DNA from: Dendrobates tinctorius
Taxonomy: Eukaryota
Direction: 5' to 3'
Assembly: GCF_039654945.1 (NCBI RefSeq)
Contig: NW_027361788.1
Location: 42,966,001-43,030,000 of the forward strand
DNA length: 64,000 nucleotides
Below the pieces are notes generated by a model, which saw only the letters and a list, made by a program, of their open reading frames with translations, was not told where the DNA came from and ran no database searches. Made by a program: the position numbers and the translations under genes. Shown one piece after another: positions 1-39,818 of this stretch. Numbering within the stretch: the stretch's first letter is position 1; each line of letters starts with the position of its first letter.

Positions 1-3000
1 GTAATATCATCCTATAGTGTACCCAATTATACTACCATAGTGTACCATGTAATATCATCCTATAGTGTGCCCAATTATACTACCATAGTGTACCAAGTAA
101 TATCATCTTATAGTGTGCTCAATTATACTACCATAGTGTACCAAGTAATATCGTCCTATAGTATGCCCAATTATACTATCATAGTGTACCAAGTAATATC
201 ATCTTATAGTGTGTCAATTATACTACCATAGTATACCAAGTAATATCATCCTATAGTATGCCCAATTATACTACCATAGTGTACCAAGTAATATCATCTT
301 ATAGTGTGCCCAATTATACTACCATAGTGTACTAAGTAATATCGTCCTATAGTATGCCCAATTATACTACCATAGTGTACCAAGTAATATCGTCCTATAG
401 TATGCCCAATTACACTACCATAGTGTACCAAGTAATATCATCTTATAGTGTGCCCAATTATACTACCATAGTGTACCAAGTAATATCATCCTATAGTATG
501 CCCAATTATACTACCATAGTGTACCAAGTAATATCGTCCTATAGTATGCCCAATTATACTACCATAGTGTACCAAGTAATATCGTCCTATAGTATGCCCA
601 ATTATACTACCATAGTGTACCAAGTAATATCATCTTAGTGTGCTCAATTATACTACCATAGTATTCCAAGTAATATCATCCTATAGTATGCCCAATTATA
701 CTACCATAGTGTACCAAGTAATATCATCTTAGTGTGCTCAATTATACTACCATAGTATTCCAAGTAATATCATCCTATAGTATGCCCAATTATACTACCA
801 CAGTGCACAAAGTAATATCATCTTATAGTGTGCCCAATTATACCACCATAGTGTACCAAGTAATATCATCTTATAGTGTGCTCAATTATACTACCATAGT
901 GTACCAAGTAATATCGTCCTATAGTATGCCCAATTATACTACCATAGTGTACCAAGTAATATCATCCTATGGTATGCCCAATTATACTACCATAGTGTAC
1001 GAAGTAATATCATCATATAGTGTGTCAATTATACTACCATAGCATACCAAGTAATATCATCCTATGGTATGCCCAATTATACTACCATAGTGTACCAAGT
1101 AATATCATCCTATAGTGTGCTCAATTATACTACCATAGTGTACCAAGTAATATCGTCCTATAGTATGCCCAATTATACTACCATAGTGTACCAAGTAATA
1201 TCATCTTATAGTGTGCTCAATTATACTACCATAGTGTACCAAGTAATATCATCCTATAGTGTGCTCAATTATACTACCATAGTGTACCAAGTAATATCGT
1301 CCTATAGTATGCCCAATTATACTACCATAGTGTACCAAGTAATATCACCATATAGTGTGTCAATTATACTACCATAGTATACCAAGTAAAATCATCCTAT
1401 GGTATGCCCAATTATATTACCATAGTGTACCAAGTAATATCATCTTATAGTGTGCTCAATTATACTACCATAGTGTACCAAGTAATATCGTCCTATAGTA
1501 TGCCCAATTATACTACCATAGTGTACCAAGTAATATCATCTTATAGTGTGTCAATTATACTACCATAGTATACCAAGTAATATCATCCTATAGTATGCCC
1601 AATTATACTACCATAGTGTACCAAGTAATATCGTCCTATAGTATGCCCAATTAAACTACCATAGTGTACCAAGTAATATCGTCCTATAGTATGCCCAATT
1701 ATACTACCATAGTATACCAAGTAATATCATCTTATAGTGTGCCCAATTATACTACCATAGTGTACCAAGTAATATCATCCTATAGTGTGCCCAATTATAC
1801 TACCATAGTGTACCATGTAATATCATCCTATAGTGTGCCCAATTATACTACCATAGTGTACCAAGTAATATCATCCTATAGTATGCCCAATTATACTACC
1901 ATAGTGTACCAAGTAATATCGTCCTATAGTATGCCCAATTATACTACCATAGTGTACCAAGTAATATCATCTTATAGTGTGTCAATTATACTACCATAGT
2001 GTACCAAGTAATATCGTCCTATAGTATGCCCAATTATACTACCATAGTGTACCAAGTAATATCATCTTATAGTGTGCCCAATTATACTACCATAGTGTAC
2101 CAAGTAATATCGTCCTATAGTATGCCCAATTATACTACCATAGTGTACCAAGTGATATCATCTTATAGTGTGCTCAATTATACTACCATAGTATTCCAAG
2201 TAATATCATCCTATAGTATGCCCAATTATACTACCACAGTGCACAAAGTAATATCATCCTATAGTGTACTCAAGTATACTACCATAGTGTACCATGTAAT
2301 ATCATCCTATAGTGTGCCCAATTATACTACCATAGTGTACCAAGTAATATCATCTTATAGTGTGCTCAATTATACTACCATAGTGTACCAAGTAATATCA
2401 TCCTATAGTGTGCCCAATTATACTACCATAGTGTACCAAGTAATATCATCTTATAGTGTGTCAAATATACTACCATAGTGTACCAAGTAATATCGTCCTA
2501 TAGTATGCCCAATTATACTACCATAGTGTACCAAGTAATATCATCTTATAGTGTTCCCAATGATACTACCATAGTGTACCAAGTAATATCATCCTATAGT
2601 GTGCCCAATTATACTACCATAGTGTACCAAGTAATATCATCTTATAGTGTGCTCAATTATACTACCATAGTATTCCAAGTAATATCATCCTATAGTATGC
2701 CCAATTATACTACCACAGTGCACAAAGTAATATCATCCTATAGTGTACCCAATTATACTACCATAGTATACCAAGTAATATCATCCTATAGTGTGCCCAA
2801 TTATACTACCACAGTGCACAAAGTAATATCATCCTATAGTGTACCCAATTATACTACCATAGTGTACCATGTAATATCATCTTATAGTGTGCCCAATTAT
2901 ACTACCATAGTGTACCAAGAAATATCATCTTATAGTGTGTCCAATTATACTACCATAGTGTACCATTTAATATCGTCCTATAGTATGCCCAATTATACTA

Positions 3001-6000
3001 CCATAGTGTACCAAGTAATATCGTCCTAGAGTATGCCCAATTATACTACCATAGTATACCAAGAAATATCATCCTATAGTGTGCCCAATTATACTACCAC
3101 AGTGCACAAAGTAATATCATCCTATAGTGTACCCAATTATACTACCATAGTATACCAAGTAATATCATCCTATAGTATGCCCAATTATACTACCACAGTG
3201 CACAAAGTAATATCATCCTATAGTGTACCCAATTATACTACCATAGTGTACCATTTAATATCGTCCTATAGTATGCCCAATTATACTACCATAGTGTACC
3301 AAGTAATATCATCTTATAATGTGCCCAATTATACTACCATAGTGTACCAAGTAATATCATCTTATAGTGTGCCCAATTATACTACCATAGTGTACCATTT
3401 AATATCGTCCTATAGTATGCCCAATTATACTACCATAGTGTACCAAGTAATATCGTCCTAGAGTATGCCCAATTATACTACCATAGTATACCAAGAAATA
3501 TCATCCTATAGTGTGCCCAATTATACTACCACAGTGCACAAAGTAATATCATCCTATAGTGTACCCAATTATACTACCATAGTATACCAAGTAATATCAT
3601 CCTATAGTGTGCCCAATTATACTACCACAGTGCACAAAGTAATATCATCCTATAGTGTACCCAATTATACTACCATAGTGTACCATGTAATATCGTCCTA
3701 TAGTATGCCCAATTATACTACCATAGTGTACCATGTAATATCATCCTATAGTGTGTCCAATTATACTACCATAGTGTACCAAGTAATATCATCTTATAGT
3801 GTGCTCAATTATACTACCATAGTGTACCAAGTAATATCGTCCTATAGTATGCCCAATTATAATACCATAGTGTACCAAGTAATATCATCTTATAGTGTGT
3901 CAATTATACTACCATAGTGTACCAAGTAATATCGTCCTATAGTATGCCCAATTATACTACCATAGTGTACCAAGTAATATCATCTTATAGTGTGCCCAAT
4001 TATACTACCATAGTGTACCAAGTAATATCGTCCTATAGTATGCCCAATTATACTACCATAGTGTACCAAGTAATATCATCTTATAGTGTGCTCAATTATA
4101 CTACCATAGTATTCCAAGTAATATCATCCTATAGTATGCCCAATTATACTACCACAGTGCACAAAGTAATATCATCCTATAGTATGCACAATTATACTAC
4201 CATAGTGTACCAAGTAATATCATCTTATAGTGTGCTCAATTATACTACCATAATATTCCAAGTAATATCATCCTATAGTATGCCCAATTATACTACCACA
4301 GTGCACAAAGTAATATCATCCTATAGTGTACCCAATTATACTACCATAGTGTACCAAGTAATATCATCTTATAGTGTGCTCAATTATACTACCATAGTAT
4401 TCCAAGTAATATCATCCTATAGTATGTCCAATTATACTACCACAGTGCACAAAGTAATATCATCCTATAGTGTACCCAATTATACTACCATAGTGTACCA
4501 TGTAATATCGTCCTATAGTGTGCCCAATTATACTACCATAGTGTACCAAGTAATATCATCTTATAGTGTGTCAATTATACTACCATAGTGTACCAAGTAA
4601 TATCGTCCTATAGTATGCCCAATTATACTACCATAGTGTACCAAGTAATATCATCTTATAGTGTGCCCAATTATACTACCATAGTGTACCAAGTAATATC
4701 GTCCTATAGTATGCCCAATTATACTACCATAGTGTACCAAGTAATATCATCTTATAGTGTGCTCAATTATACTACCATAGTATTCCAAGTAATATCATCC
4801 TATAGTATGCCCAATTATACTACCACAGTGCACAAAGTAATATCATCCTATAGTGTACCCAATTATACTACCATAGTGTACCATGTAATATCGTCCTATA
4901 GTGTGCCCAATTATACTACCATAGTGTACCAAGTAATATCATCTTATAGTGTGTCAATTATACTACCACAGTGTACCAAGTAATATCCTCCTATAGTATG
5001 CCCAATTATACTACCATAGTGTACCAAGTAATATCATCTTATATTGTGCCCAATTATACTACCATAGTGTACCAAGTAATATCGTCCTATAGTATGCCCA
5101 ATTATACTACCATAGTGTACCAAGTAATATCATCTTATAGTGTGCTCAATTATACTACCAAAGTATTCCAAGTAATATCATCCTATAGTATGCCCAATTA
5201 TACTACCACAGTGCACAAAGTAATATCATCCTATAGTGTACTCAATTATACTACCATAGTGTACCATGTAATATCATCCTATAGTGTGCCCAATTATACT
5301 ACCATAGTGTACCAAGTAATATCATCTTATAGTGTGCTCAATTATACTACCATAGTGTACCAAGTAATATCATCCTATAGTGTGCCCAATTATACTACCA
5401 TAGTGTACCAAGTAATATCATCTTATAGTGTGTCAAATATACTACCATAGTGTACCAAGTAATATCGTCCTATAGTATGCCCAATTATACTACCATAGTG
5501 TACCAAGTAATATCATCTTATAGTGTGCCCAATTATACTACCATAGTGTACCAAGTAATATCGTCCTATAGTATGCCCAATTATACTACCATAGTGTACC
5601 AAGTAATATCATCTTATAGTGTGCTCAATTATACTACCATAGTATTCCAAGTAATATCATCCTATAGTATGCCCAATTATACTACCACAGTGCACAAAGT
5701 AATATCATCCTATAGTGTACTCAATTATACTACCATAGTGTACCATGTAATATCATCCTATAGTGTGCCCAATTATACTACCATATTGTACCAAGTAATA
5801 TCGTCCTATAGTATGCCCAATTATACTACCATAGTGTACCAAGTAATATCATCTTATAGTGTGCCCAATTATACTACCATAGTGTAGCAAGTAATATCAT
5901 CCTATAGTGTGCCCAACTATACTACCACAGTGCACAAAGTAATATCATCCTATAGTGTACCCAATTATACTACCATAGTATACCAAGTAACATCATCCTA

Positions 6001-9000
6001 TAGTGTGCCCAATTATACTACCACAGTGCACAAATTAATATCATCCTATAGTGTGCTCAATTATACTACCATAGTGTACCATTTAATATCGTCCTATAGT
6101 ATGCCCAATTATACTACCATAGTGTACCAAGTAATATCGTCCTAGAGTATGCCCAATTATACTACCATAGTATACCAAGAAATATCATCCTATAGTGTGC
6201 CCAATTATACTACCACAGTGCACAAAGTAATATCATCCTATAGTGTACCCAATTATACTACCATAGTGTACCAAGTAATATCGTCCTAGAGTATGCCCAA
6301 TTATACTACCATAGTATACCAAGTAATATCATCCTATAGTGTGCCCAATTATACTACCACAGTGCACAAAGTAATATCATCCTATAGTGTACCCAATTAT
6401 ACTACCATGGTGTACCATGTAATATCGTCCTATAGTATGCCCAATTATACTACCATAGTGTACCAAGTAATATCATCCTATAGTGTGCTCAATTATACTA
6501 CCATAGTGTACCAAGTAATATCGTCCTATAGTATGCCCAATTATACTACCATAGTGTACCAAGTAATATCATCTTATAGTGTGTCAATTATACTACCATA
6601 GTATACCAAGTAATATCATCCTATAGTATGCCCAATTATACTACCATAGTGTACCAAGTAATATCGTCCTATAGTATGCCCAATTATACTACCATAGTGT
6701 ACCAAGTAATATCGTCCTATAGTATGCCCAATTATACTACCATAGTGTACCAAGTAATATCATCTTATAGTGTGCCCAATTATACTACCATAGTGTACCA
6801 AGTAATATCATCCTATAGTGTGCCCAATTATACTACCATAGTGTACCATGTAATATCATCCTATAGTGTGCCCAATTATACTACTATAGTGTACCAAGTA
6901 ATATCATCCTATAGTATGCCCAATTATACTACCATAGTGTACCAAGTAATATCGTTCTATAGTATGCCCAATTATACTACCATAGTGTACCAAGTAATAT
7001 CATCTTATAGTGTGTCAATTATACTACCATAGTGTACCAAGTAATATCGTCCTATAGTATGCCCAATTATACTACCATAGTGTACCAAGTAATATCATCT
7101 TATAGTGTGCCCAATTATACTACCATAGTGTACCAAGTAATATCGTCCTATAGTATGCCCAATTATACTACCATAGTGTACCAAGTGATATCATCTTATA
7201 GTGTGCTCAATTATACTACCATAGTGTACCAAGTAATATCATCCTATAGTATGCCCAATTATACTACCACAGTGCACAAAGTAATATCATCCTATAGTGT
7301 ACTCAATTATACTACCATAGTGTACCATGTAATATCATCCTATAGTGTGCCCAATTATACTACCATAGTGTACCAAGTAATATCATCTTATAGTGTGCTC
7401 AATTATACTATCATAGTGTACCAAGTAATATCATCCTATAGTGTGCCCAATTATACTACCATAGTGTACCAAGTAATATCATCTTATAGTGTGTCAAATA
7501 TACTACCATAGTGTACCAAGTAATATCGTCCTATAGTATGCCCAATTATACTACCATAGTGTACCAAGTAATATCATCTTATAGTGTTCCCAATGATACT
7601 ACCATAGTGTACCAAGTAATATCGTCCTATAGTATGTCCAATTATACTACCATAGTGTACCAAGTAATATCATCTTATAGTGTGCTCAATTATACTACCA
7701 TAGTATTCCAAGTAATATCATCCTATAGTATGCCCAATTATACTACCACAGTGCACAAAGTAATATCATCCTATAGTGTACCCAATTATACTACCATAGT
7801 GTACCATTTAATATCGTCCTATAGTATGCCCAATTATACTACCATAGTGTACCAAGTAATATCATCTTATAGTGTGCCCAATTATACTACCATAGTGTAC
7901 CAAGAAATATCATCTTATAGTGTGCCCAATTATACTACCTTAGTGTACCATTTAATATCGTCCTATAGTATGCCCAATTATACTACCATAGTGTACCAAG
8001 TAATATCGTCCTAGAGTATGCCCAATTATACTACCATAGTATACCAAGAAATATCATCCTATAGTGTGCCCAATTATACTACCACAGTGCACAAAGTAAT
8101 ATCATCCTATAGTGTACCCAATTATACTACCATAGTATACCAAGTAATATCATCCTATAGTGTGCCCAATTATACTACCACAGTGCACAAAGTAATATCA
8201 TCCTATAGTGTACCCAATTATACTACCATAGTGTACCATTTAATATCGTCCTATAGTATGCCCAATTATAATACCATAGTGTACCAAGTAATATCATCTT
8301 ATAATGTGCCCAATTACACTACCATAGTGTACCAAGTAATATCTTATAGTGTGCCCAATTATACTACCATACTGTACCATTTAATATCGTCCTATAGTAT
8401 GCCCAATTATACTACCATAGTGTACCAAGTAATATCGTCCTAGAGTATGCCCAATTATACTACCATAGTATACCAAGAAATATCATCCTATAGTGTGCCC
8501 AATTATACTACCACAGTGCACAAAGTAATATCATCCTATAGTGTACCCAATTATACTACCATAGTATACCAAGTAATATCATCCTATAGTGTGCCCAATT
8601 ATACTACCACAGTGCACAAAGTAATATCATCCTATAGTGTACCCAATTATACTACCATAGTGTACCATGTAATATCGTCCTATAGTATGCCCAATTATAC
8701 TACCATAGTATACCAAGTAATATCATCCTATAGTGTGCCCAATTATACTACCACAGTGCACAAAATAATATCATCCTATAGTGTACCCAATTATACTACC
8801 ATAGTATACCAAGTAATATCATCCTATAGTGTGCCCAATTATACTACCACAGTGCACAAAGTAATATCATCCTATAGTGTACCCAATTATACTACCATAG
8901 TGTACCATGTAATATCGTCCTATAGTATGCCCAATTATACTACCATAGTGTACCATGTAATATCATCCTATAGTGTGTCCAATTATACTACCATAGTGTA

Positions 9001-12000
9001 CCAAGTAATATCATCTTATAGTGTGCTCAATTATACTACCATAGTGTACCAAGTAATATCATCCTATAGTATGCCCAATTATAATACCATAGTGTACCAA
9101 GTAATATCATTTTATAGTGTGCTCAATTATACTACCATAGTATTCCAAGTAATATCATCCTATAGTATGCCCAATTATACTACCACAGTGCACAAAGTAA
9201 TATCATCCTATAGTATGCCCAATTATACTACCAAAGTGTACCAAGTAATATCATCTTATAGTGTGCTCAATTATACTACCATAGTATTCCAAGTAATATC
9301 ATCCTATAGTATGTCCAATTATACTACCACAGTGCACAAAGTAATATCATCCTATAGTGTACCCAATTATACTACCATAGTGTACCATGTAATATCGTCC
9401 TATAGTGTGCCCAATTATACTACCATAGTGTACCAAGTAATATCATCTTATAGTGTGTCAATTATACTACCATAGTGTACCAAGTAATATCGTCCTATAG
9501 TATGCCCAATTATACTACCATAGTGTACCAAGTAATATCATCTTATAGTGTGCCCAATTATACTACCATAGTGTACCAAGTAATATCGTCCTATAGTATG
9601 CCCAATTATACTACCATAGTGTACCAAGTAATATCATCTTATAGTGTGCTCAATTATACTACCATAGTATTCCAAGTAATATCATCCTATAGTATGCCCA
9701 ATTATACTACCACAGTGCACAAAGTAATATCATCCTATAGTGTACTCAATTATACTACCATAGTGTACCATGTAATATCATCCTATAGTGTGCCCAATTA
9801 TACTACCATAGTGTACCAAGTAATATCATCTTATAGTGTGCTCAATTATACTACCATAGTGTACCAAGTAATATCATCCTATAGTGTGCCCAATTATACT
9901 ACCATAGTGTACCATGTAATATCGTCCTATAGTGTGCCCAATTATACTACCATAGTGTACCAAGTAATATCATCTTATAGTGTGTCAAATATACTACCAT
10001 AGTGTACCAAGTAATATCGTCCTATAGTATGCCCAATTATACTACCATAGTGTACCAAGTAATATCATCTTATAGTGTGCCCAATTATACTACCATAGTG
10101 TACCAAGTAATATCGTCCTATAGTATGCCCAATTATACTACCATAGTGTACCAAGTAATATCATCTTATAGTGTGCTCAATTATACTACCATAGTATTCC
10201 AAGTAATATCATCCTATAGTATGCCCAATTATACTACCACAGTGCACAAAGTAATATCATCCTATAGTGTACTCAATTATACTACCATAGTGTACCATGT
10301 AATATCATCCTATAGTGTGCCCAATTATACTACCATATTGTACCAAGTAATATCGTCCTATAGTATGCCCAATTATACTACCATAGTGTACCAAGTAATA
10401 TCATCTTATAGTGTGCCCAATTATACTACCATAGTATAGCAAGTAATATCATCCTATAGTGTGCCCAACTATACTACCACAGTGCACAAAGTAATATCAT
10501 CCTATAGTGTACCCAATTATACTACCATAGTGTACCATTTAATATCGTCCTATAGTATGCCCAATTATACTACCATAGTGTACCAAGTAATATCATCTTA
10601 TAGTGTGCCCAATTATACTACCATAGTGTACCAAGAAATATCATCTTATAGTGTGCCCAATTATACTACCATAGTGTACCATTTAATATCGTCCTATAGT
10701 ATGCCCAATTATACTACCATAGTGTACCAAGTAATATCGTCCTAGAGTATGTCCAATTATACTACCATAGTATACCAAGAAATATCATCCTATAGTGTGC
10801 CCAATTATACTACCACAGTGCACAAAGTAATATCATCCTATAGTGTACCCAATTATACTACCATAGTATACCAAGTAACATCATCCTATAGTGTGTCCAA
10901 TTATACTACCACAGTGCACAAAGTAATATCATCCTATAGTGTACCCAATTATACTACCATAGTGTACCATGTAATATCTTCCTATAGTATGCCCAATTAT
11001 ACTACCATAGTGTACCATGTAATATCATCCTATAGTGTGCCCAATTATACTACCATAGTGTACCAAGTAATATCGTCCTATAGTATGCCCAATTATACTA
11101 CCATAGTGTACCACGTAATATCATCTTATAGTGTGCTCAATTATACTACCATAGTATTCCAAGTAATATCATCCTATAGTATGCCCAATTATACTACCAC
11201 AGTGCACAAAGTAATATCATCCTATAGTGTACTCAATTATACTACCATAGTGTACCATGTAATTTCATCCTATAGTGTGCCCAATTATACTACCATATTG
11301 TACCAAGTAATATCGTCCTATAGTATGCCCAATTATACTACCATAGTGTACCAAGTAATATCATCTTATAGTGTGCCCAATTATACTACCATAGTATAGC
11401 AAGTAATATCATCCTATAGTGTGCCCAACTATACTACCACAGTGCACAAAGTAATATCATCCTATAGTGTACCCAATTATACTACCATAGTGTACCATTT
11501 AATATCGTCCTATAGTATGCCCAATTATACTACCATAGTGTACCAAGTAATATCATCTTATAGTGTGCCCAATTATACTACCATAGTGTACCAAGAAATA
11601 TCATCTTACAGTGTGCCCAATTATACTATCATAGTGTACCATTTAATATCGTCCTATAGTATGCCCAATTATACTACCATAGTGTACCAAGTAATATCGT
11701 CCTAGAGTATGTCCACTTATACTACCATAGTATACCAAGAAATATCATCCTATAGTGTGCCCAATTATACTACCACAGTGCACAAAGTAATATCATCCTA
11801 TAGTGTACCCAATTATACTACCATAGTATACCAAGTAACATCATCCTATAGTGTGTCCAATTATACTACCACAGTGCACAAAGTAATATCATCCTATAGT
11901 GTACCCAATTATACTACCATAGTGTACCATTTAATATCGTCCTATAGTATGCCCAATTATACTACCATAGTGTACCAAGTAATATCATCTTATAGTGTGC

Positions 12001-15000: not shown

Positions 15001-18000
15001 ATATCATCTTATAGTGTACTCAATTATACTACCATAGCGTACCAAGTAATATCGTCCTATAGTATGCCCAACTATACTACCATAGTGTACCAAGTAATAT
15101 CATCCTATAGTATGCCCAATTATACTACTATAGTGTACCAAGTAATATCATCCTATAGTATGCCCAATTATACTACCACAGTGCACAAAGTAATATCATC
15201 CTATAGTGTACCCAATTATAGTGTACCATGTAATATCATCCTATAGTGGCCCAATTATACTACCATAGTGTACCAAGTAATATCATCATATAGTGTGTCA
15301 ATTATACTACCATAGTATACCAAGTAATATCATCTTATAGTGTGCCCAATTATACTACCATAGTGTACCAAGTAATATCATCCTATAGTGTGCTCAATTA
15401 TACTACCATAGTGTACCAAGTAATATCGTCCTATAGTATGCCCAATTATAATACCATAGTGTACCAAGTAATATCACCATATAGTGTGTCAATTATACTA
15501 CCATAGTATACCAAGTAAAATCATCCTATGGTATGCCCAATTATACTACCATAGTGTACCAAGTAATATCATCTTATAGTGTGCTCAATTATGCTACCAT
15601 AGTGTACCAAGTAATATCGTCCTATAGTATGCCCAATTATACTACCATAGTGTACCAAGTAATATCATCTTATAGTGTGTCAATTATACCACCATAGTAT
15701 ACCAAGTAATATCATCCTATAGTATGCCCAATTATACTACCATAGTGTACCAAGTAATATCATCTTATAGTGTGCCCAATTATACTACCATAGTGTACCA
15801 AGTAATATCGTCCTATAGTATGCCCAATTATACTACCATAGTGTACCAAGTAATATCGTCCTATAGTATGCCCAATTATACTACCATAGTGTACCAAGTA
15901 ATATCATCCTATAGTGTGCCCAATTATACTACCATAGTGTACCAAGTAATATCATCCTATAGTGTGCCCAATTATACTACCATAGTGTGCCATGTAATAT
16001 CATCCTATAGTGTGCCCAATTATACTACCATAGTGTACCAAGTAATATCATCCTATAGTATGCCCAATTATACTACCATAGTGTACCACGTAATATCGTC
16101 CTATAGTATGCCCAATTATACTACCATAGTGTACCAAGTAATATCATCTTATAGTGTGTCAATTATACTACCATAGTGTACCAAGTAATATCGTCCTATA
16201 GTATGCCCAATTATACTACCATAGTGTACCAAGTAATATCATCTTATAGTGTGCCCAATTATACTACCATAGTGTACCAAGTAATATCGTCCTATAGTAT
16301 GCCCAATTATACTACCATAGTGTACCAAGTAATATCATCTTATAGTGTGCTCAATTATACTACCATAGTATTCCAAGTAATATCATCCTATAGTATGCCC
16401 AATTATACTACCACAGTGCACAAAGTAATATCATCCTATAGTGTACTCAATTATACTACCATAGTGTACCATGTAATATCATCCTATAGTGTGCCCAATT
16501 ATACTACCATAGTGTACCAAGTAATATCATCTTATAGTGTGCTCAATTATACTACCATAGTGTACCAAGTAATATCATCCTATAGTGTGCCCAATTATAC
16601 TACCATAGTGTACCAAGTAATATCATCTTATAGTGTGTCAAATATACTACCATAGTGTACCAAGTAATATCGTCCTATAGTATGCCCAATTATACTACCA
16701 TAGTGTACCAAGTAATATCATCTTATAGTGTGCCCAATTATACTACCATAGTGTACCAAGTAATATCGTCCTATAGTATGCCCAATTATACTACCATAGT
16801 GTACCAAGTAATATCTTATAGTGTGCTCAATTATACTACCATAGTATTCCAAGTAATATCATCCTATAGTATGCCCAATTATACTACCACAGTGCACAAA
16901 GTAATATCATCCTATAGTGTACCCAATTATACTACCATAGTGTACCATGTAATATCATCCTATAGTGTGCCCAATTATACTACCATAGTGTACCAAGTAA
17001 TATCATCTTATAGTGTGCTCAATTATACTACCATAGTGTACCAAGTAATATCGTCCTATAGTATGTCCAATTATACTACCATAGTGTACCAAGTAATATC
17101 ATCCTATAGTATGCCCAATTATACTACCATAGTGTACCAAGTAATATCGTCCTATAGTATGCCCAATTATACTACCATAGTGTACCAAGTAATATCATCT
17201 TATAGTGTGCTCAATTATACTACCATAGTATTCCAAGTAATATCATCCTATAGTATGCCCAATTATACTACCACAGTGCACAAAGTAATATCATCCTATA
17301 GTGTGCCCAATTATACTACCATAGTGTACCATGTAATATCATCTTATAGTGTGCTCAATTATACTACCATAGCGTACCAAGTAATATCGTCCTATAGTAT
17401 GCCCAACTATACTACCATAGTGTACCAAGTAATATCATCCTATAGTATGCCCAATTATACTACTATAGTGTACCAAGTAATATCATCCTATAGTGTGCCC
17501 AATTATACTACCACAGTGCACAAAGTAATATCATCCTATAGTGTACCCAATTATAGTGTTCCATGTAATATCATCCTATAGTATGCCCAATTATACTACC
17601 ATAGTGTACCAAGTAATATCATCATATAGTGTGTCAATTGTACTACCATAGTATACCAAGTAATATCATCTTATAGTGTGCCCAATTATACTACCATAGT
17701 GTACCAAGTAATATCGTCTTATAGTGTGCCCAATTATACTACCATAGTATACCAAGTAATATCGTCCTATAGTATGCCCAATTATACTACCATAGTGTAC
17801 CAAGTAATATCATCTTATAGTGTGCCCAATTATACTACCATAGTGTACCATGTAATATCATCCTATAGTGTGCCCAATTATACAACCATAGTGTACCAAG
17901 TGATATCATCTTATAGTGTGCCCAATTATACTACCACACTGCACAAAGTAATATCCTATAGTATGCCCAATTATACTACCATAGTGTACCAAGTAATATC

Positions 18001-21000
18001 GTCTTATAGTGTGCTCAATTATACTACCATAGTATTCCAAGTAATATCATCCTATAGTATGCCCAATTATACTACCATAGTGTACCAAGTAATATCATCT
18101 TATAGTGTTCCCAATTATACTACCATAGTGTACCATGTAATATCATCCTATACTGTGCCCAATTATACAACCATAGTGTACCAAGTAATATCATCTTATA
18201 GTGTGCCCAATTATACTACCACACTGCACAAAGTAATATCCTATAGTATGCCCAATTATACTACCATAGTGTACCAAGTAATATCATCTTATAGTGTGCT
18301 CAATTATACTACCATAGTATTCCAAGTAATATCATCCTATAGTATGCCCAATTATACTACCATAGTGTACCAAGTAATATCATCTTATAGTGTGCCCAAT
18401 TATACTACCATAGTGTACCATGTAATATCATCCTATAGTGTGCCCAATTATACTACCATAGTGTACCAAGTAATATCATCTTATAGTGTGCCCAATTATA
18501 CTACCATAGTGTACCAAGTAATATCATCTTATAGTGTGCCCAATTATACTACCATAGTGTACCAAGTAATATCATCCTATAGTATGCCCAATTATACTAC
18601 CACAGTGCACAAAGTAATATCATCCTATAGTGTACCCAATTATACTACCATAGTGTACCATGTAATATCATCCTATAGTGTGCCCAATTATACTACCATA
18701 GTGTACCAAGTAATATCATCTTATAGTGTGCTCAATTATACTACCATAGTGTACCAAGTAATATCGTCCTATAGTATGTCCAATTATACTACCATAGTGT
18801 ACCAAGTAATATCATCATATAGTGTGTCAATTATACTACCATAGTATACCAAGTAATATCATCCTATGGTATGCCCAATTATACTACCATAGTGTACCAA
18901 GTAATATAATCCTATAGTATGCCCAATTATACTACCATAGTGTACCAAGCAATATCGTCCTATAGTATGCCCAATTATACTACCATAGTGTACCAAGTAA
19001 TATCATCTTATAGTGTGCTCAATTATACTACCATAGTATTCCAAGTAATATCGTCCTATAGTATGTCCAATTATACTACCATAGTGTACCAAGTAATATC
19101 ATCATATAGTGTGTCAATTATACTACCATAGTATACCAAGTAATATCATCCTATGGTATGCCCAATTATACTACCATAGTGTACCAAGTAATATCATCCT
19201 ATAGTATGCCCAATTATACTACCATAGTGTACCAAGTAATATCGTCCTATAGTATGCCAAATTATACTACCATAGTGTACCAAGTAATATCATCTTATAG
19301 TGTGCTCAATTATACTACCATAGTATTCCAAGTAATATCATCCTATAGTGTGCCCAATTATACTACCACAGTGCACAAAGTAATATCATCCTATAGTGTA
19401 CCCAATTATAGTGTACCATGTAATATCATCCTATAGTATGCCCAATTATACTACCATAGTGTACCAAGTAATATCATCATATAGTGTGTCAATTATACTA
19501 CCATAGTATACCAAGTAATATCATCTTATAGTGTGCCCAATTATACTACCATAGTGTACCAAGTAATATCGTCCTATAGTATGCCCAATTATACTACCAT
19601 AGTGTACCAAGTAATATCATCTTATAGTATGCCCAATTATACTACCACAGTGCACAAAGTAATATCATCCTATAGTGTACCCAATTATAGTGTACCATGT
19701 AATATCATCCTATAGTGTGCCCAATTATACTACCATAGTGTACCAAGTAATATCATCTTATAGTGTGCTCAATTATACTACCATAGTGTACCATGTAATA
19801 TCATCCTATAGTATGCCCAATTATACTACCATAGTGTACCAAGTATTATCATCTTATAGTGTGCCCAATTATACTACCATAGTGTACCAAGTAATATCGT
19901 CCTATAGTATGCCCAATTATACTACCATAGTGTACCAAGTAATATCGTTCTATAGTATGCCCAATTATACTACCATAGTGTACCAAGTAATATCATCTTA
20001 TAGAGTGCTCAATTATACTACCATAGTATTCCAAGTAATATCATCCTATAGTGTGCCCAATTATACTACCATAGTGTACCAAGTAATATCATCCTATAGT
20101 ATGCCCAATTATACTACCATAGTGTACCAAGTAATATCATCTTATAGTGTGCCCAATTATACTACCATAGTGTACCAAGTAATATCGTCCTATAGTATGC
20201 CCAATTATACTACCATAGTGTACCAAGTAATATCGTCCTATAGTATGCCCAATTATACTACCATAGTGTACCAAGTAATATCATCTTATAGTGTGCTCAA
20301 TTATACTACCATAGCGTACCAAGTAATATCGTCCTATAGTATGCCCAACTATACTACCATAGTGTACCAAGTAATATCATCCTATAGTATGCCCAATTAT
20401 ACTACCATAGTGTACCATGTAATATCATCCTATAGTGTGCCCAATTATACTACCATAGTGTACCAAGTAATATCATCCTATAGTATGCCCAATTATACTA
20501 CTATAGTGTACCAAGTAATATCATCCTATAGTGTGCCCAATTATACTACCACAGTGCACAAAGTAATATCATCCTATAGTGTACCCAATTATAGTGTACC
20601 ATGTAATATCATCCTATAGTATGCCCAATTATACTACCATAGTGTACCAAGTAATATCATCTTATAGTGTGCCCAATTATACTACCATAGTGTACCAAGT
20701 AATATCGTCCTATAGTATGCCCAATTATACTACCATAGTGTACCAAGTAATATCATCTTATAGTGTGCTCAATTATACTACCATAGTATTCCAAGTAATA
20801 TCATCCTATAGTATGCCCAATTATACTACCACAGTGCACAAAGTAATATCATCCTATAGTGTACCCAATTATACTACCATAGTGTACCATGTAATATCAT
20901 CCTATAGTGTACCCAATTATACTACCATAGTGTACCAAGTAATATCATCCTATAGTATGCCCAATTATACTACCATAGTGTACCAAGTAATATCGTCCAA

Positions 21001-24000
21001 TAGTATGCCCAATTATACTACCATAGTGTACCAAGTAATATCATCTTATAGTGTGTCAATTATACTACCATAGTATACCAAGTAATATCGTCCTATAGTA
21101 TGACCAATTATACTACCATAGTGTACCATGTAATATGTATACTACCATAGTATACCAAGTATACCAAGTAATACCAAGTATACTACCATAGCTACCATAT
21201 ACTACCATGTAATATCATCCTATAGTGTGCCCAATTATACTACCATAGTGTACCAAGTAATATCATCTTATAGTGTGTCAATTATACTACCATAGTATAC
21301 CAAGTAATATCGTCCTATAGTATGACCAATTATACTACCATAGTGTACCATGTAATATCATCCTATAGTGTGCCCAATTATACTACCATAGTGTACCAAG
21401 TAATATCATCCTATAGTATGCCCAATTATACTACCATAGTGTACCAAGTAATATCATCTTATAGTGTGCCCAATTATACTACCATAGTGTACCAAGTAAT
21501 ATCGTCCTATAGTATGCCCAATTATACTACCATAGTGTACCAAGTAATATCGTCCTATAGTATGCCCAATTATACTACCACAGTGTACCAAGTAATATCA
21601 TCTTATAGTGTGCTCAATTATACTACCATAGCGTACCAAGTAATATCGTCCTATAGTATGCCCAACTATACTACCATAGTGTACCAAGTAATATCATCCT
21701 ATAGTATGCCCAATTATACTACCATAGTGTACCAAGTAATATCATCTTATAGTGTGCCCAATTATACTACCATAGTGTACCAAGTAATATCGTCCTATAG
21801 TGTGCCCAATTATACTACCATAGTGTACCAAGTAATATCATCCTATAGTATGCCCAATTATACTACTATAGTGTACCAAGTAATATCATCCTATAGTGTG
21901 CCCAATTATACTACCACAGTGCACAAAGTAATATCATCCTATAGTGTACCCAATTATAGTGTACCATGTAATATCATCCTATAGTATGCCCAATTATACT
22001 ACCATAGTGTACCAAGTAATATCATCTTATAGTGTGCCCAATTATACTACCATAGTGTACCAAGTAATATCGTCCTATAGTATGCCCAATTATACTACCA
22101 TAGTATACCAAGTAATATCATCTTATAGTGTGCTCAATTATACTACCATAGTATTCCAAGTAATATCATCCTATAGTATGCCCAATTATACTACCACAGT
22201 GCACAAAGTAATATCATCCTATAGTGTACCCAATTATACTACCATAGTGTACCATGTAATATCATCCTATAGTGTACCCAATTTTACTACCATAGTGTAC
22301 CAAGTAATATCATCCTATAGTATGCCCAATTATACTACCATAGTGTACCAAGTAATATCGTCCAATAGTATGCCCAATTATACTACCATAGTGTACCAAG
22401 TAATATCATCTTATAGTGTGTCAATTATACTACCATAGTATACCAAGTAATATCGTCCTATAGTATGACCAATTATACTACCATAGTGTACCATGTAATA
22501 TGTATACTACCATAGTATACCAAGTATACCAAGTAATACCAAGTATACTACCATAGCTACCATATACTACCATGTAATATCATCCTATAGTGTGCCCAAT
22601 TATACTACCATAGTGTACCAAGTAATATCATCTTATAGTGTGTCAATTATACTACCATAGTATACCAAGTAATATCGTCCTATAGTATGACCAATTATAC
22701 TACCATAGTGTACCATGTAATATCATCCTATAGTGTGCCCAATTATACTACCATAGTGTACCAAGTAATATCATCCTATAGTATGCCCAATTATACTACC
22801 ATAGTGTACCAAGTAATATCATCTTATAGTGTGCCCAATTATACTACCATAGTGTACCAAGTAATATCGTCCTATAGTATGCCCAATTATACTACCATAG
22901 TGTACCAAGTAATATCGTCCTATAGTATGCCCAATTATACTACCACAGTGTACCAAGTAATATCATCTTATAGTGTGCTCAATTATACTACCATAGCGTA
23001 CCAAGTAATATCGTCCTATAGTATGCCCAACTATACTACCATAGTGTACCAAGTAATATCATCCTATAGTATGCCCAATTATACTACCATAGTGTACCAA
23101 GTAATATCATCTTATAGTGTGCCCAATTATACTACCATAGTGTACCAAGTAATATCGTCCTATAGTATGCCCAATTAAACTACCATAGTGTACCAAGTAA
23201 TATCATCATATAGTGTGTCAATTATACTACCATAGTATACCAAGTAATATCATCCTATGGTATGCCCAATTATACTACCATAGTGTACCAAGTAATATCA
23301 TTCTATAGTATGCCCAATTATACTACTATACTGTACCATGTAATATCATCCTATAGTGTGCCCAATTATACTACCATAGTGTACCATGTAATATCATCTT
23401 ATAGTGTGCCCAATTATACTACCATAGTGTACCATGTAATATCATCCTATAGTGTGCCCAATTATACTACCATAGTGTACCAAGTAATATCATCCTATAG
23501 TATGCCCAATTATACTACTATAGTGTACCAAGTAATATCATCCTATAGTGTGCCCAATTATACTACCACAGTGCACAAAGTAATATCATCCTATAGTGTA
23601 CCCAATTATAGTGTACCATGTAATATCATCCTATAGTATGCCCAATTATACTACCATAGTGTACCAAGTAATATCATCTTATAGTGTGCCCAATTATACT
23701 ACCATAGTGTACCAAGTAATATCGTCCTATAGTATGCCCAATTATACTACCATAGTGTACCAAGTAATATCATCTTATAGTGTGCCCAATTATACTACCA
23801 TAGTGTACCAAGTAATATCGTCCTATAGTATGCCCAATTATACTACCATAGTGTACCAAGTAATATCATCTTATAGTGTGTCAATTATACTACCATAGTA
23901 TACCAAGTAATATCGTCCTATAGTATGACCAATTATACTACCATAGTGTACCATGTAATATGTATACTACCATAGTATACCAAGTATACCAAGTAATACC

Positions 24001-25150
24001 AAGTATACTACCATAGCTACCATATACTACCATGTAATATCATCCTATAGTGTGCCCAATTATACTACCATAGTGTACCAAGTAATATCATCTTATAGTG
24101 TGTCAATTATACTACCATAGTATATCAAGTAATATCGTCCTATAGTATGACCAATTATACTACCATAGTGTACCATGTAATATCATCCTATAGTGTGCTC
24201 AATTATACTACCATAGTGTACCAAGTAATATCATCCTATAGTATGCCCAATTATACTACCATAGTGTACCAAGTAATATCATCTTATAGTGTGCCCAATT
24301 ATACTACCATAGTGTACCAAGTAATATCGTCCTATAGTATGCCCAATTATACTACCATAGTGTACCAAGTAATATCGTCCTATAGTATGCCCAATTATAC
24401 TACCACAGTGTACCAAGTAATATCATCTTATAGTGTGCTCAATTATACTACCATAGCGTACCAAGTAATATCGTCCTATAGTATGCCCAACTATACTACC
24501 ATAGTGTACCAAGTAATATCATCCTATAGTATGCCCAATTATACTACCATAGTGTACCAAGTAATATCATCTTATAGTGTGCCCAATTATACTACCATAG
24601 TGTACCAAGTAATATCGTCCTATAGTATGCCCAATTATACTACCATAGTGTACCAAGTAATATCATCATATAGTGTGTCAATTATACTACCATAGTATAC
24701 CAAGTAATATCATCCTATGGTATGCCCAATTATACTACCATAGTGTACCAAGTAATATCATTCTATAGTATGCCCAATTATACTACTATAGTGTACCATG
24801 TAATATCATCCTATAGTGTGCCCAATTATACTACCATAGTGTACCATGTAATATCATCTTATAGTGTGCTCAATTATACTACCATAGCGTACCAAGTAAT
24901 ATCGTCCTATAGTATGCCCAACTATACTACCATAGTGTACCAAGTAATATCATCCTATAGTATGCCCAATTATACTACTATAGTGTACCAAGTAATATCA
25001 TCCTATAGTGTGCCCAATTATACTACCACAGTGCACAAAGTAATATCATCCTATAGTGTACCCAATTATACTACCATAGTGTACCATGTAATATCATCCT
25101 ATAGTGTGCCCAATTATACTACCAGTGTACCAAGTAATATCATTGTATAG
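1..25150. repeat. 48-bp tandem satellite array, consensus GTAATATCATCCTATAGTGTGCCCAATTATACTACCATAGTGTACCAA, ~520 copies, continues beyond the left edge
   Basis: Direct 48-nt periodicity throughout (16-aa periodicity in the ORF track). Recurrent variants include ACAGTGCACAAA, GTATTCC, TCGTCC and 1-bp-deleted GTGTCAAT units. Decayed copies continue to ~25,310. Confidence 0.99.
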
Positions 25151-25513
25151 TGTGCCAGATTATACCACCATACAGTGACCAAGTCATACCAACCTATAGT
25201 ACTTCAATAATACTAATATACAGTGACCAAAAATACCAATCTATATTGTACAACTATACCACCATACAGTGCACGAATATCAAACTATAGAATTTCCAAA
25301 TTATAATACCATACGAGGAGGTAGGGGAGAGGGGGAGGGTTGGAGCTTTCACACTGGAAGCATGGATGAATCCATTGCTGTAATTAGAAACCAGTGTGTG
25401 CCTACCTGCTGGTGATTGCAGCCGACAGAAGAGACTAATGACTATGACCAAGGGCATCTTAGTAAACCAGAAACACGTCAGGGGCTGAGCTTTCTATTTT
25501 GATGGACTTTTTA

Positions 25514-26101
25514 GGCTATGTGCACACGTTCGGAAATGCTGCGGAAATGTCCGCAGCATTTCCGCAACTCCCCGCCGCGGGTAAAGTGCATGTGGAATTC
25601 GCATGCGTTTTCCAGCTAAACACAAGCGTTTTGCAAGTGTATTTAGCTTGCAGAATGCTTGCGCTTTCCAAGCGATTTGAAGCATCGCTTGGAAAAGTGA
25701 TTGACAGGTTGGTCACACTTGTCAAGCATAGTGACCAACTTTTTACTATTGATGCTAACTATGCAGCATCAATAGTAAAGATAGGATGTTAAAAATAATT
25801 TTAAAAAAAATTAAAAACTGGTTATTCTCACCTTCTGACAGCCCCCGATCTCCTCAGCGGCGCTCCCGGTACGTTCTGGTCCCAGTGATGCTTTGCGCGA
25901 AGGACCTTTGTGACGTCACGCTCGCGAGAGCGCGGCATCATCTCAGGCCATTCGCGCAAAGCATCACTGGGACCGGAAGATGCTGGCAGCGTGGTGAGAG
26001 GCGGGAAGGACTCCGGGGGCCATCAGAGGGTGAGTATATTACTATTTTTTATTTTAATTCTATTTTTTACAGGATTATGGTACCCAGGGCCTGGAGGAGA
26101 G
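25514..26101. mobile_element. Truncated PIF/Harbinger-type MITE (GGCTATGTGCACAC family)
   Basis: Left end is TTA|GGCTATGTGCACAC with an internal palindrome. The sequence matches the complete copies at 40,901-41,737 and 60,647-61,559; the right TIR is missing. Confidence 0.8.
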
Positions 26102-26220
26102 TGCACAAATAATATCAACCTATAGCATCCCTAAATTTACCACCACAATGTACCCATATGATATCACACTATAGAGTGCTTGATAGTGCCCAAATTATTC
26201 CATAATTTGCACATAGTGTT
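26101..26220. repeat. Degenerate copies of the 48-bp satellite monomer
   Basis: GTGCACAAATAATATCAACCTATAG... and ATAGTGCCCAAATTAT resemble the array monomer. Confidence 0.7.
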
Positions 26221-26292
26221 TCTTTTCTGAACATTTGTTGCTTTACATCTGCATTACAAGTGCAGGCTAATGTTGGGTAACCTCCTGCTCAC

Positions 26293-27568
26293 CTTGCTTT
26301 TTCACGAGTGTTTCTTTCAGGGCTGTTTTTTCTGCATATACTGAAATATAAACCCGACAGTATATTGCACATCGCCATATACATAGGACAGGACTAGCGC
26401 AGTGAATCATGGCTGCTCACGTTTCTGTAGTTCCCGCTCTTCTGCTTCTATCTCCTTGTCTAATTCCTGCTTCTCGGCCTCGCTTTGCTCCCGATCTGCA
26501 CAAGTATAGAGCCGCCATCAGCTGCTGTTTTAAAGCCGTCTTACATTTCAGGATGAAAGGGACCTACGAAGTCCCCAAAGCTTGCTTTGTATCATCATTT
26601 ATTTTATTTTTGTTAGCCATTAAAAGGTATCATAACTACAAGATTATCTTGTTTTTCACACTGAGAGAATTACATTTCAGGATGTGATAGATTGTGAATT
26701 AGGGTCCCGTTACATTTAGCGATGCACCAGCGATCCCGACAACGATACGACCCGGTCAGGATCGCTGGTGCATCGCTAAATTGTCGCTAGGGAGCTGCCA
26801 AACAGGCAGATCTCACCAGCGATGCAGCAGCGGTCGTTACTTACCTGTCACACCGCAGCGATGACGACGACTTCCGCCTGAGTCCATGCGGCGCTAGTCG
26901 GCGCCAGCGGGACGCCAACGAGGAAGAAATGGCCCAGGCCGTTCCAGCACGATCAGCGATATCCAGCAGGGGGGGCGGTTGCAGGTAAGTGTCACATGTA
27001 GCGAGATTGCTAGCGATATCGCTGTGCGTTACAAAATCGGTGACGCTTTAGTGAGATCGCTAGCGATATCGCTATGTGAGAAGGGGCCTTTACTAAATTG
27101 TAGGGAAACGTTTGTACAAGTCCAAACTGAATCTTACAAAAGCGATTTCAATGTAGGAATAAGGACCCCAGCTCATATCATCTGGAAATGGATAGAACGG
27201 TTCTGCTGTAATTAATTATAATGTGATACTCCACCTTTATGACCACTTTACAGATATATGAGAATCACCTAAATAACAAATTCTACTACACATTGAAAAT
27301 GCTGTTATTAGTGAATAGAATACAATAGCATGGAGAATGGACACCCTGTAATACTATATTTCCCCTGAAGGGGCGACATCTCCATCATTCTTGTTACCTT
27401 TCTGGACCATGTTAATCTTCTTCAGGACATCGTCCATCTTTGGGTCCATACGTCCTGTGGTGTAATAAGAAGGTGATACACAAGGGGTCCTCACCTCCTA
27501 TAGGTCCAGTGTATAGCGTACATACCTCCTCCCGACATGCCTGTAGTCTGGCTCAACAGCGTTTCCAT
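26293..27568 (-). CDS. syce1: SYCE1-like synaptonemal complex central element protein, first four coding exons (3' exons not in window)
   Basis: GT-AG exons 27,526-27,572 (ATG at 27,568), 27,398-27,454, 26,421-26,495 and 26,293-26,340, all phase 1. They splice to METLLSQTTGMSGGGRMDPKMDDVLKKINMVQKDREQSEAEKQELDKEIEAEERELQKLYAEKTALKETLVKKQ. This aligns with the remembered human SYCE1 segment GSLEPRVEVLINRINEVQQAKKK...[23 protein letters not shown] and is a coiled-coil-like heptad sequence. Confidence 0.78.
26702..27089. mobile_element. PIF/Harbinger-type MITE in syce1-like intron
   Basis: Imperfect TIRs GGGTCCCGTTACATTTAGCGAT / ATCGCTATGTGAGAAGGGGCCT, TTA on both flanks, AGCGAT/ATCGCT-rich body. 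Confidence 0.7.
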
Positions 27569-27679
27569 GTCACTACATGAGAAACAGAACAGCTCATGAA
27601 TACTCAGCTCAGCAGATTCAGCCTTCGGTATCATCTCTATGCTGATGACACCCAATTATACACATCGTTTACTGACATA

Positions 27680-30452: not shown

Positions 30453-31456
30453 CATCCCCTGAGGAAGAAGTACTGCTGTGTAGTATCCGAGCATTCTCTG
30501 TAGGCCTTGGCCTGTATCAGACATGTTTACCTGTTCCTGCACTGCAATCTCCAGCAACTGCTAATGTGGAAGACACGCCCGGAGACCAGATCACTCCAAC
30601 CAATCTGCAGCTGTCTTTTATCCATACAGCACAGGGTGGAGATGAAAGCAGGCACATGATAGGTTGTCCTGAATTTACCTCAGCAATCACCTCATGAGGT
30701 ATTTCTGCCCAGGTCAGAGGCGCAGTCCTCACAGAGTGAGCAGTGCAGGGCAGGTTACTCCGTGTCATCCATAGTCCGGCCTTTCTGTACAGGCCAGGGT
30801 AGCATTACTGCCACCACAGACATCTAAACCCAAAGTCATGGCTTTTGGTTAAAAATTGGGAGCTGAAAAATAAATAACAAAACACATTATTTTCTGGGAT
30901 CTGTAAATCTTCTTCATAGGCGGATGGCGCTGGTGAGGGCCTGTTTTATGCGGGGGGGGGGGGGAGCGGCCATTTTTTTTGGTGCCTTTTGATCATCTTT
31001 TATTGCATTTCCTTTTTTTTAGGGGGTAAAGAGGAGGAGGTGCAATGACCCAAAAGAACTATTCTGGAGCTCAAGTTTCTCTTTTTGGTATTTTATGTAC
31101 AAATTAAATAATTTTACACTTTAATAACTCAGGAATTTAATGGACAAGACCAAATAGGTTTACTTTTAGGCTGGAGTCACACTTAACGGATAAAAATACG
31201 CTCCGTATTTTTCGGCCGTAATACGGAGAAATGGTCCCTAAATAGTGCTCCGTATGTCATCCGTTTTCAAGGTGTGGTCGTGTATTTTGCACATGTAATC
31301 CGTATGGCAACCGTATGCCGAGAATTTCTCGCCGCCTTGCAAAATGGACATATAATGGAGCCCTATGACAGGTTTACAAACAAACGAAAGAATAGATATA
31401 GACACATAGAATGCATCTATATATATATACACACATCATAGAGACACACATATATA

Positions 31457-32677: not shown

Positions 32678-32687
32678 TATATATATA

Positions 32688-39625: not shown

Positions 39626-39818
39626 CACTCAGACTAACAGGGGCCCATGCTCTGCTACAGTAGAGATTGCCATCCGGTGTCTCAACAGTTATTCCAATAC
39701 CACAACTCCCAGCAAGCCTTGGGTGTCCCTGGCCTTCAGCGTCACATCGGCCGTGGTCTGCGCTCCTCAGTGGGGGCCACACTCGAGCCCTCATCTTCTG
39801 AGGGGCCCTGTATAGACA

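What the first reader, a model, noticed from the sequence alone, without database searches (positions are those of the whole stretch)
1..27572. A >25-kb satellite array apparently lies inside an intron of a meiotic SYCE1-like gene
Seen: four in-frame minus-strand exons end at a strong donor (AAG|GTGAG, 26,293/26,292). I found no further SYCE1-like exon before the satellite, which runs off the window. The other introns of this gene are only 71, 902 and 80 nt. Known: SYCE1 has many more downstream exons and is germline-restricted. Satellite-inflated introns are known from Drosophila Y-loop fertility genes, and satellite read-through transcription from amphibian lampbrush loops. Inference: either meiocytes transcribe and splice >26 kb of near-pure satellite to make a synapsis protein (vertebrate intron gigantism, with possible timing or RNA-scaffold effects and an array-length polymorphism affecting fertility), or the array has broken the gene.
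Basis: partly seen in the sequence, partly recalled or inferred. Interest (0 to 1): 0.85.

Follow-up and report, generated by a model that had tools for sequence, protein, structure and literature searches.

The report
Satellite-filled intron in frog SYCE1
A poison-frog gene for a chromosome-pairing protein (SYCE1) has at least 25 kb of a 48-base tandem repeat directly behind its fifth exon, and a spliced transcript shows the gene still reads on past it; this is real but fairly ordinary for this repeat-rich genome.

Summary
A 48-bp satellite of about 525 copies fills window 1-25200. Their 74-aa product matches Pfam SYCE1 above the curated cut-off, but only profile positions 1-60 of 152.

One 1019-nt contig from a transcript-like public run removes all three introns at the predicted sites. 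At the donor at 26293 it continues in frame for about 721 nt, and the first 30 nt of that continuation, the only letters the tool gave, are nowhere in the 64-kb window. So the gene is expressed and not truncated. The array most likely sits in an intron of at least 26.3 kb and is spliced out.

The far end of that intron lies outside the window and could not be fetched. A mis-join or a broken duplicate therefore remains possible, together about 0.2.

Nothing supports a timing, scaffold or fertility role. A 26-kb intron is not gigantic for a vertebrate. Unchecked earlier notes of this scan describe other satellite-filled introns in this genome (BCAT2, HGD, CLN3), though not this array. I class it as a new member of a known kind, of modest interest.

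The parts
1..25200 (.). 48-bp satellite array of about 525 monomers in a single orientation, running off the left end of the window. The gene's sense strand is minus.
   Evidence: monomers are 92% identical to the consensus. Pairwise identity is about 86% and flat with distance, with no higher-order period. Neither strand has AATAAA, GTAAGT or GTGAGT.
25205..25313 (.). Degenerate edge of the satellite, in the same orientation as the array.
   Evidence: local alignment score 64 against a shuffle maximum of 19; identity to the consensus falls to 0.43 after 25207.
25346..26099 (.). Insert of high-copy repeats that splits the degenerate satellite flank. It includes a hairpin (MITE-like) element with arms at 25861-25907 and 25945-25991.
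   Evidence: 47-nt inverted repeat. (summed contig depth in the tens to hundreds of thousands in run X17). (only sub-threshold hairpin matches in Rfam).
26100..26179 (.). Degenerate satellite copies in the same orientation, 114 nt from the exon 5 donor.
   Evidence: score 59 against a shuffle maximum of 27.
26293..26340 (-).
   Evidence: joint 26340>26421, and the contig leaves the stretch at 26293.
26421..26495 (-). SYCE1 exon 4.
   Evidence: record 29 covers it with 1 different letter.
27398..27454 (-). SYCE1 exon 3.
   Evidence: joints 26495>27398 and 27453>27525 (cut +1).
27526..27572 (-). SYCE1 exon 2, with the start codon at 27568-27566.
   Evidence: It holds the first ATG of the transcript, with G at -3 and G at +4 (read from the sequence).
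27573..30530 (-). Intron 1 (2958 nt), which holds two 41-bp tandem arrays at 27681-28085 and 29496-30453.
30531..30601 (-). SYCE1 exon 1 (5' UTR; its 5' end is only the end of the contig), with donor CAG|GTAAAC.
   Evidence: loose end of 69 nt at 27574; its 30-mer lies at 30533-30562 with 1 mismatch; sequence.

Best explanation
This is the 5' part of the frog's working SYCE1 gene (synaptonemal complex central element protein 1), on the minus strand. It has a 5' UTR exon and four small coding exons. Behind the fifth exon comes an intron of at least 26.3 kb. Apart from 1.1 kb of degenerate repeat and transposon debris, the visible part of that intron is one uniform array of a 48-bp satellite. 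RNA polymerase II would transcribe through the array as ordinary pre-mRNA. The donor at 26293 is then joined to a sixth exon that lies beyond the left end of the window. The satellite looks like a passive, tolerated passenger, because it lacks strong splice and poly(A) signals on the sense strand. Shown here: the array, the exons, the SYCE1 identity, use of the donor, and continuation of the mRNA. Inferred: that exon 6 lies on the far side of the same array, and that the array has no function.
For: Array: one search finds 48 bp x 528 copies at 1-25200. SYCE1 identity: one search gives PF15233 at 30.8 bits against a cut-off of 27, covering profile positions 1-60 of 152, so most of the domain must be encoded downstream.

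Transcript: run X2 has one 1019-nt contig (depth 406) with joints at 26340>26421, 26495>27398 and 27453>27525. All three have CT..AC ends, which is GT..AG on the minus strand. X2 has no depth in the repeat-free parts of the introns, as expected of RNA. At 26293 the contig goes on for about 721 nt. The first 30 nt continue the frame as EIVRLLKIKR without a stop. That 30-mer has no match in the window on either strand at up to 3 mismatches. The contig's 5' 30-mer does lie in the window, upstream and in the right orientation.

Age and natural boundary: degenerate copies in the same orientation lie at 25205-25313 and 26100-26179, split by a 755-bp repeat insert. Pairwise monomer identity is about 86% and flat with distance. 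A contig of the DNA-like run X17 carries the edge at 25251-25411 with 2 differences and runs on leftward past the end of the laid stretch. Despite that age, the exons keep an open frame and canonical splice sites, and they were close to the transcript where the output let me compare: 1 different letter in 75 in exon 4 and 1 in 30 in the UTR exon.

Tolerance: the minus strand of the array has no AATAAA, GTAAGT, GTGAGT or Y8NCAG.
Against: The far end of the intron is outside the window. I could not fetch the record to the left, so neither the position and orientation of exon 6 nor the true array length has been seen. The run with the transcript is only guessed to be RNA, and it is labelled with an organism code (A) whose relation to the window's species is unknown to me. 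It differs at about 2 of 105 compared letters, so it may be a close relative. The gene set attached to the public record calls no gene over 29.8-39.8 kb, which includes the 5' UTR exon. The array is longer than the average 19-kb HiFi fragment of the D. tinctorius assembly paper (PMC11152451), if this record is that assembly, so a mis-join cannot be excluded from the sequence alone.
Confidence: 0.78

Rival explanations
1. Assembly artefact. The array and the gene are wrongly joined, or the array is collapsed or expanded. The real intron is different and exon 6 lies elsewhere in the assembly.
For: The array is at least 25.2 kb, longer than the mean read of a 19-kb HiFi library (if this record is that assembly). 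Its other end is unseen. No annotation spans it.
Against: There is no N in the window. The monomers differ enough (about 86% pairwise, no higher-order period) for long accurate reads to overlap unambiguously. The array edge is a graded, degenerate boundary with a repeat insert, not an abrupt switch. A contig of a different run (X17) carries the same edge at 25251-25411 and runs on leftward.
Confidence: 0.1
2. Broken gene or truncated duplicate. The satellite, or a rearrangement at it, cut off the 3' part. The mRNA seen comes from an intact SYCE1 copy elsewhere or from a related species.
For: Only profile positions 1-60 of 152 of the SYCE1 domain are encoded here. The transcript-bearing run may be of a relative (1 of 75 and 1 of 30 letters differ).
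Against: The array flank looks old, yet all four coding exons keep an open frame, canonical sites and an upstream UTR exon that is also in the transcript. A long-dead fragment would be expected to decay. No second copy of any exon lies in the window. By established knowledge from mouse and human, loss of SYCE1 causes infertility, so an intact gene must exist somewhere, and this locus fits the mRNA.
Confidence: 0.08
3. Functional satellite intron. The array is kept because transcribing it delays or doses SYCE1, or because its RNA acts as a scaffold in meiocytes or on lampbrush loops.
For: There is only an analogy with the Drosophila Y-loop genes (PMC6508621) and with satellite transcription on newt lampbrush loops (PMC2114352). 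The sense strand is free of strong processing signals.
Against: At generally cited elongation rates of a few kb per minute, 26 kb costs only minutes of transcription (established knowledge). The satellite RNA folds no better than shuffles (z = 0.35). Rfam has no match. Monomers diverge evenly, as in a neutral array. Unchecked earlier notes suggest intronic satellites are frequent in this genome. A 48-bp unit can lack such signals by chance.
Confidence: 0.04

Closest known systems
Vertebrate SYCE1 (Pfam PF15233), central element of the synaptonemal complex
   Same: The N-terminal coiled-coil region matches the family profile from its first position, above the curated cut-off. The coding part is split into many small exons. 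One of the three transcript-like runs that were laid holds the spliced message at high depth.
   Different: Only the first 60 of 152 profile positions are encoded in the window. The N-terminal 14 residues lie outside the profile match. phmmer found no solved-structure relative at E up to 10, so the sequence is divergent.
Satellite-containing gigantic introns of the Drosophila Y-loop fertility genes kl-3, kl-5 and ks-1 (PMC6508621; PMC11207136)
   Same: A gene acting in the germline, by inference from the family, with small exons and an intron whose visible part is almost pure tandem satellite. That intron has to be transcribed and spliced out.
   Different: Those introns reach megabases of 5- to 7-bp simple satellites, sit on a heterochromatic Y, form visible loops and need dedicated RNA-binding proteins (Blanks, Heph). 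Here at least 26 kb of a 48-bp unit is seen. I do not know which chromosome the contig belongs to. Nothing shows a special expression programme.
Read-through transcription of satellites on amphibian and avian lampbrush loops (newt satellite 2, PMC2114352; chicken, PMC11602149)
   Same: An amphibian satellite lying downstream of a promoter that is presumably active in germ cells, so it would be transcribed as part of a longer RNA.
   Different: There the satellite is transcribed by failure to terminate behind a gene. Here it would be a regular intron between used splice sites. Transcription of the array itself was not observed.
Other satellite-filled introns noted in this genome by this scan (BCAT2 about 18 kb, HGD about 4 kb, CLN3)
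   Same: Same genome and the same arrangement, with tandem arrays making up most of an intron.
   Different: The repeat families differ. This one is the longest of those listed, runs off the window, and sits in a gene of a meiotic family. Those notes are unchecked AI notes.

Membership tests
SYCE1 (PF15233) | Match to the family profile above the curated gathering score | tested here: met
   30.8 bits against 27, E=3.5e-7. Residues 15-74 match profile positions 1-60. The next best family scores 16 bits.
SYCE1 (PF15233) | Complete domain and full-length protein of about 300 aa or more | not testable with these tools
   Only profile positions 1-60 of 152 are in the window. The transcript contig leaves room for up to 314 codons, but only 30 nt of its downstream part were shown. 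My attempts to fetch a full-length relative failed.
SYCE1 (PF15233) | Germline-restricted expression | tested here: inconclusive
   the spliced contig is present at depth 406 in run X2 and absent from X1 and X14. The tissues of the runs are not given.
Satellite-containing gigantic introns (Drosophila Y-loop type) | Intron composed mainly of tandem satellite DNA | tested here: met
   25.2 kb of the visible 26.3 kb is the 48-bp array, and degenerate copies start 114 nt from the donor.
Satellite-containing gigantic introns (Drosophila Y-loop type) | Intron length of hundreds of kb to megabases | not testable with these tools
   Only at least 26,292 nt is visible. The array runs off the window and the flanking record could not be read.
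Satellite-containing gigantic introns (Drosophila Y-loop type) | Both flanking exons joined in the mRNA, so the satellite is transcribed and removed | tested here: inconclusive
   One search shows that the donor at 26293 is used and the mRNA continues. One search shows the next exon is not in the window. Its place beyond the array is inferred, and satellite-containing nascent RNA was not examined.
Satellite-containing gigantic introns (Drosophila Y-loop type) | Dedicated expression programme (loop formation, specific RNA-binding proteins) | not testable with these tools
   This needs cytology and genetics.
Lampbrush read-through satellite transcripts | Satellite RNA made by read-through from an upstream gene promoter in oocytes | not tested
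No oocyte nuclear RNA was available.

The most novel reading that the evidence does not exclude
The array continues for hundreds of kilobases to the left. SYCE1 would then be a true vertebrate case of satellite intron gigantism. Its transcription across the satellite in spermatocytes or on oocyte lampbrush loops would be rate-limiting or regulated, and array length would vary between individuals with effects on synapsis or fertility.
Probability: 0.05. Interest if true: 0.8.

Novelty: new member of a known kind. Interest (0 to 1): 0.3.

Why it matters
It gives a concrete vertebrate example of a gene from an essential meiotic family whose pre-mRNA apparently has to cross tens of kilobases of nearly pure satellite and is still spliced correctly. 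That makes it a convenient natural test of how the transcription and splicing machinery copes with tandem repeats outside the Drosophila Y chromosome. It also shows that automated annotation can miss such genes: the attached gene set calls nothing over 29.8-39.8 kb, which includes the 5' UTR exon. The practical weight is limited. The visible length is ordinary for a vertebrate intron, similar introns are noted elsewhere in this genome, and no function of the array is indicated.

Tried and rejected
1. Full-length SYCE1 by profile search. A 30-aa exact read-through piece of exon 3 (window:27381-27470:-) found three proteins, and Pfam showed none of them to be SYCE1; all matched at three to five separate places, as repeat-rich proteins do. 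A 47-aa piece in the search for homologous proteins found no candidate. So I could not locate the downstream exons in the public record.

2. Walking left in the record. The SFT2D3 look-up placed the window at JAYMGB010000046.1 42,966,001-43,030,000, but no tool reads that record by coordinate, and no called gene gives an anchor to the left.

3. Solved structures: no SYCE1 hit at E up to 10.

4. Higher-order repeat: the spacing of about 1.4 kb between repeated TRF rows suggested one, but monomer identity is flat with distance. Rejected.

5. Structured or known RNA in the satellite or the gene region: Rfam gave only sub-threshold hairpin matches to plant miRNA families on a MITE-like element. 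The satellite RNA fold has z = 0.35. Rejected.

6. Earlier notes by sequence or relatives were blank.

7. A processed pseudogene in a DNA run as the source of the spliced contig. Rejected because run X2 has no depth over the repeat-free introns and flanks, while the contig has depth 406.
Full report
**What is in the sequence**

Tandem Repeats Finder reports a single array at window 1-25200 with a 48-bp period, 528 copies and 89% matches. The window holds no N.

Cutting the array into monomers gives about 525 units, 48 bp long in 467 cases. Mean identity to the consensus is about 92% all along the array, then falls abruptly to 0.43 after 25207. Monomer-to-monomer identity is about 86% whatever the distance, with only a slight even/odd alternation. 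There is therefore no higher-order repeat and no local homogenisation.

Degenerate copies in the same orientation lie at 25205-25313 and again at 26100-26179. Their alignment scores are 64 and 59, against shuffle maxima of 19 and 27. Between them sits a 755-bp block of very high-copy repeats that includes a 47-nt-armed hairpin. The satellite tract thus begins 114 nt behind the last visible exon, and its edge looks old and natural.

**The gene**

The introns are 71, 902 and 80 nt, and the final donor reads AAG|GTGAGC.

The 74-aa product hits Pfam SYCE1 (PF15233) at 30.8 bits against a curated cut-off of 27, E=3.5e-7. The match covers profile positions 1-60 of 152. All other families score 16 bits or less. 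phmmer against solved structures found nothing. The protein is therefore a divergent but genuine SYCE1 N-terminus, and most of the domain must be encoded further downstream.

**Transcript evidence**

I laid contigs of four public runs on window 25250-27680.

- Run X2 is labelled 'RNA?'. It has depth over the exons and the repeats but none over the repeat-free parts of the introns, as expected of RNA.
- X2 holds one 1019-nt contig of depth 406 with joints at 26340>26421, 26495>27398 and 27453>27525. All have GT..AG ends on the minus strand. These are precisely the three predicted introns.
- At its 5' side the contig leaves the stretch at 27574 for 69 nt. That sequence lies in the window at 30533-30562 with one mismatch. 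It defines a 5' UTR exon at about 30601-30531 with donor CAG|GTAAAC, and a 2958-nt intron 1.
- At 26293 the contig goes on for about 721 nt that lie on nothing in the stretch. On the minus strand the first 30 nt read AAATCGTCCGACTTCTAAAGATAAAACGTG. They continue the frame as E-I-V-R-L-L-K-I-K-R without a stop. From my memory of the human protein, which I did not check with a tool, this resembles the next SYCE1 segment.
- This 30-mer has no match anywhere in the 64-kb window on either strand at up to 3 mismatches. The three-frame translation of 25150-26292 shows no such exon either.

So the donor at 26293 is used, the message is not truncated (there is room for up to 314 codons), and the next exon lies outside the window.

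**Where the window sits**

The SFT2D3-type ORF at 39822-40433 (minus strand, Pfam Got1) is on record in NCBI GCA_039654945.1, contig JAYMGB010000046.1 of 46.6 Mb. That places window position 1 at record position 42,966,001 on the same strand, with 43 Mb of contig to the left.

The gene set attached to that record calls nothing between window 29.8 and 39.8 kb, a stretch that includes the 5' UTR exon.

Earlier follow-up notes of this scan call the genome the dyeing poison frog. The paper on that genome describes a 6.3-6.8-Gb HiFi contig assembly with about 19-kb fragments, three quarters repeats and enlarged genes (PMC11152451). The paper does not print this accession, so I did not verify the species name myself.

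**Interpretation**

The simplest account is that this is the working SYCE1 gene. Its intron 5 is at least 26,292 nt long, and 25.2 kb of what is visible is the 48-bp satellite. Four points speak for in-situ intronic residence rather than a break.

- The flank is old and degenerate and is interrupted by a repeat insert.
- A contig of the DNA-like run X17 carries the edge at 25251-25411 and runs on leftward past the end of the laid stretch. X17 differs from the window by about 1-3% in the unique parts, for example 5 letters in 413 and 20 in 582.
- Despite that age, all the coding exons are intact. Where the output let me compare, they were close to the expressed message: 1 different letter in 75 in exon 4 and 1 in 30 in the UTR exon.
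- The 5' UTR exon of the transcript is present upstream in the correct orientation.

On the sense strand the array has no AATAAA, GTAAGT, GTGAGT or pyrimidine-tract-CAG, and 14 ATTAAA. It therefore offers little to the splicing and cleavage machinery. A 48-bp unit can lack such motifs by chance, so this shows tolerance, not selection.

**What is not shown**

I could not read the record to the left of the window. The position and orientation of exon 6 and the real length of the array remain unknown.

The run with the transcript carries an organism code that I cannot relate to the window's species. It may be a close relative. An assembly mis-join (about 0.1) or a truncated duplicate (about 0.08) therefore remains possible.

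**On the proposed functions**

Nothing supports a timing, scaffold or fertility role.

- At generally cited elongation rates of a few kb per minute, 26 kb adds only minutes (established knowledge).
- Five monomers of sense-strand RNA fold no better than shuffles (z = 0.35).
- Rfam finds nothing above threshold.
- The even divergence of the monomers is what a neutral array shows.
- Intron 1 of the same gene already holds two 41-bp arrays.
- Unchecked earlier notes of this scan list other satellite-filled introns in this genome, in BCAT2 (about 18 kb), HGD and CLN3.

**Comparison with known cases**

The arrangement works like the satellite-containing introns of the Drosophila Y-loop genes (PMC6508621). 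It differs in scale, with tens of kb seen here against megabases there. It also differs in repeat type, in chromosomal setting, and in the absence of any sign of a dedicated expression programme.

It also recalls satellite transcription on newt lampbrush loops (PMC2114352). Here, however, the satellite would be a regular intron, not read-through behind a gene.

**Verdict**

The core reading, that the array lies in a SYCE1 intron and the gene is not broken, is well supported but not closed. The functional extras are unsupported. This is a new member of a known kind, of modest interest.

No N stretches were touched. The laid stretch was 2431 letters. 

Noticed in passing
window 30531-30601 and 27573-30530: SYCE1 has a non-coding first exon and a 2958-nt first intron. 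Nearly half of that intron consists of two arrays of a 41-bp repeat (27681-28085 and 29496-30453).
   Followed up: yes
window 31605-32645 (+): An intact 346-aa Tc1/mariner-type transposase ORF (HTH_Tnp_Tc3_2 plus DDE_3) lies about 1 kb upstream of the SYCE1 5' exon. No gene is called there in the public gene set.
   Followed up: partly
window 38892-39794 (-): A 300-aa ORF lies directly behind the SFT2D3-type ORF (39819-40433). It is built largely of 45-bp (15-codon) tandem repeats and has no Pfam match.
   Followed up: partly
window 26644-27135 (SYCE1 intron 3) and 25496-26151: These stretches are extremely high-copy repeats. Summed contig depth reaches 2.1 million in the DNA-like run X17 at 26726-26807, against about 7-9 for unique sequence. 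They also appear abundantly in the transcript-like runs.
   Followed up: no
window 42060-42765: A C-rich 28-bp tandem repeat of 25 copies lies inside the range of the called 409-aa FtsJ-domain gene. It creates long spurious open frames on the + strand.
   Followed up: no
window 56689-60291: Several kb of G-rich arrays with periods of 36, 41, 74 and 118 bp (unit containing GGAGGGGCAGGGATTGTGGGAGGAGC), with strong GC skew. The whole window is unusually rich in tandem repeats.
   Followed up: no
window 29821-39821 (= L001 10616-20615): The gene set attached to the public record has no call over this stretch, which includes the SYCE1 5' UTR exon.
   Followed up: partly
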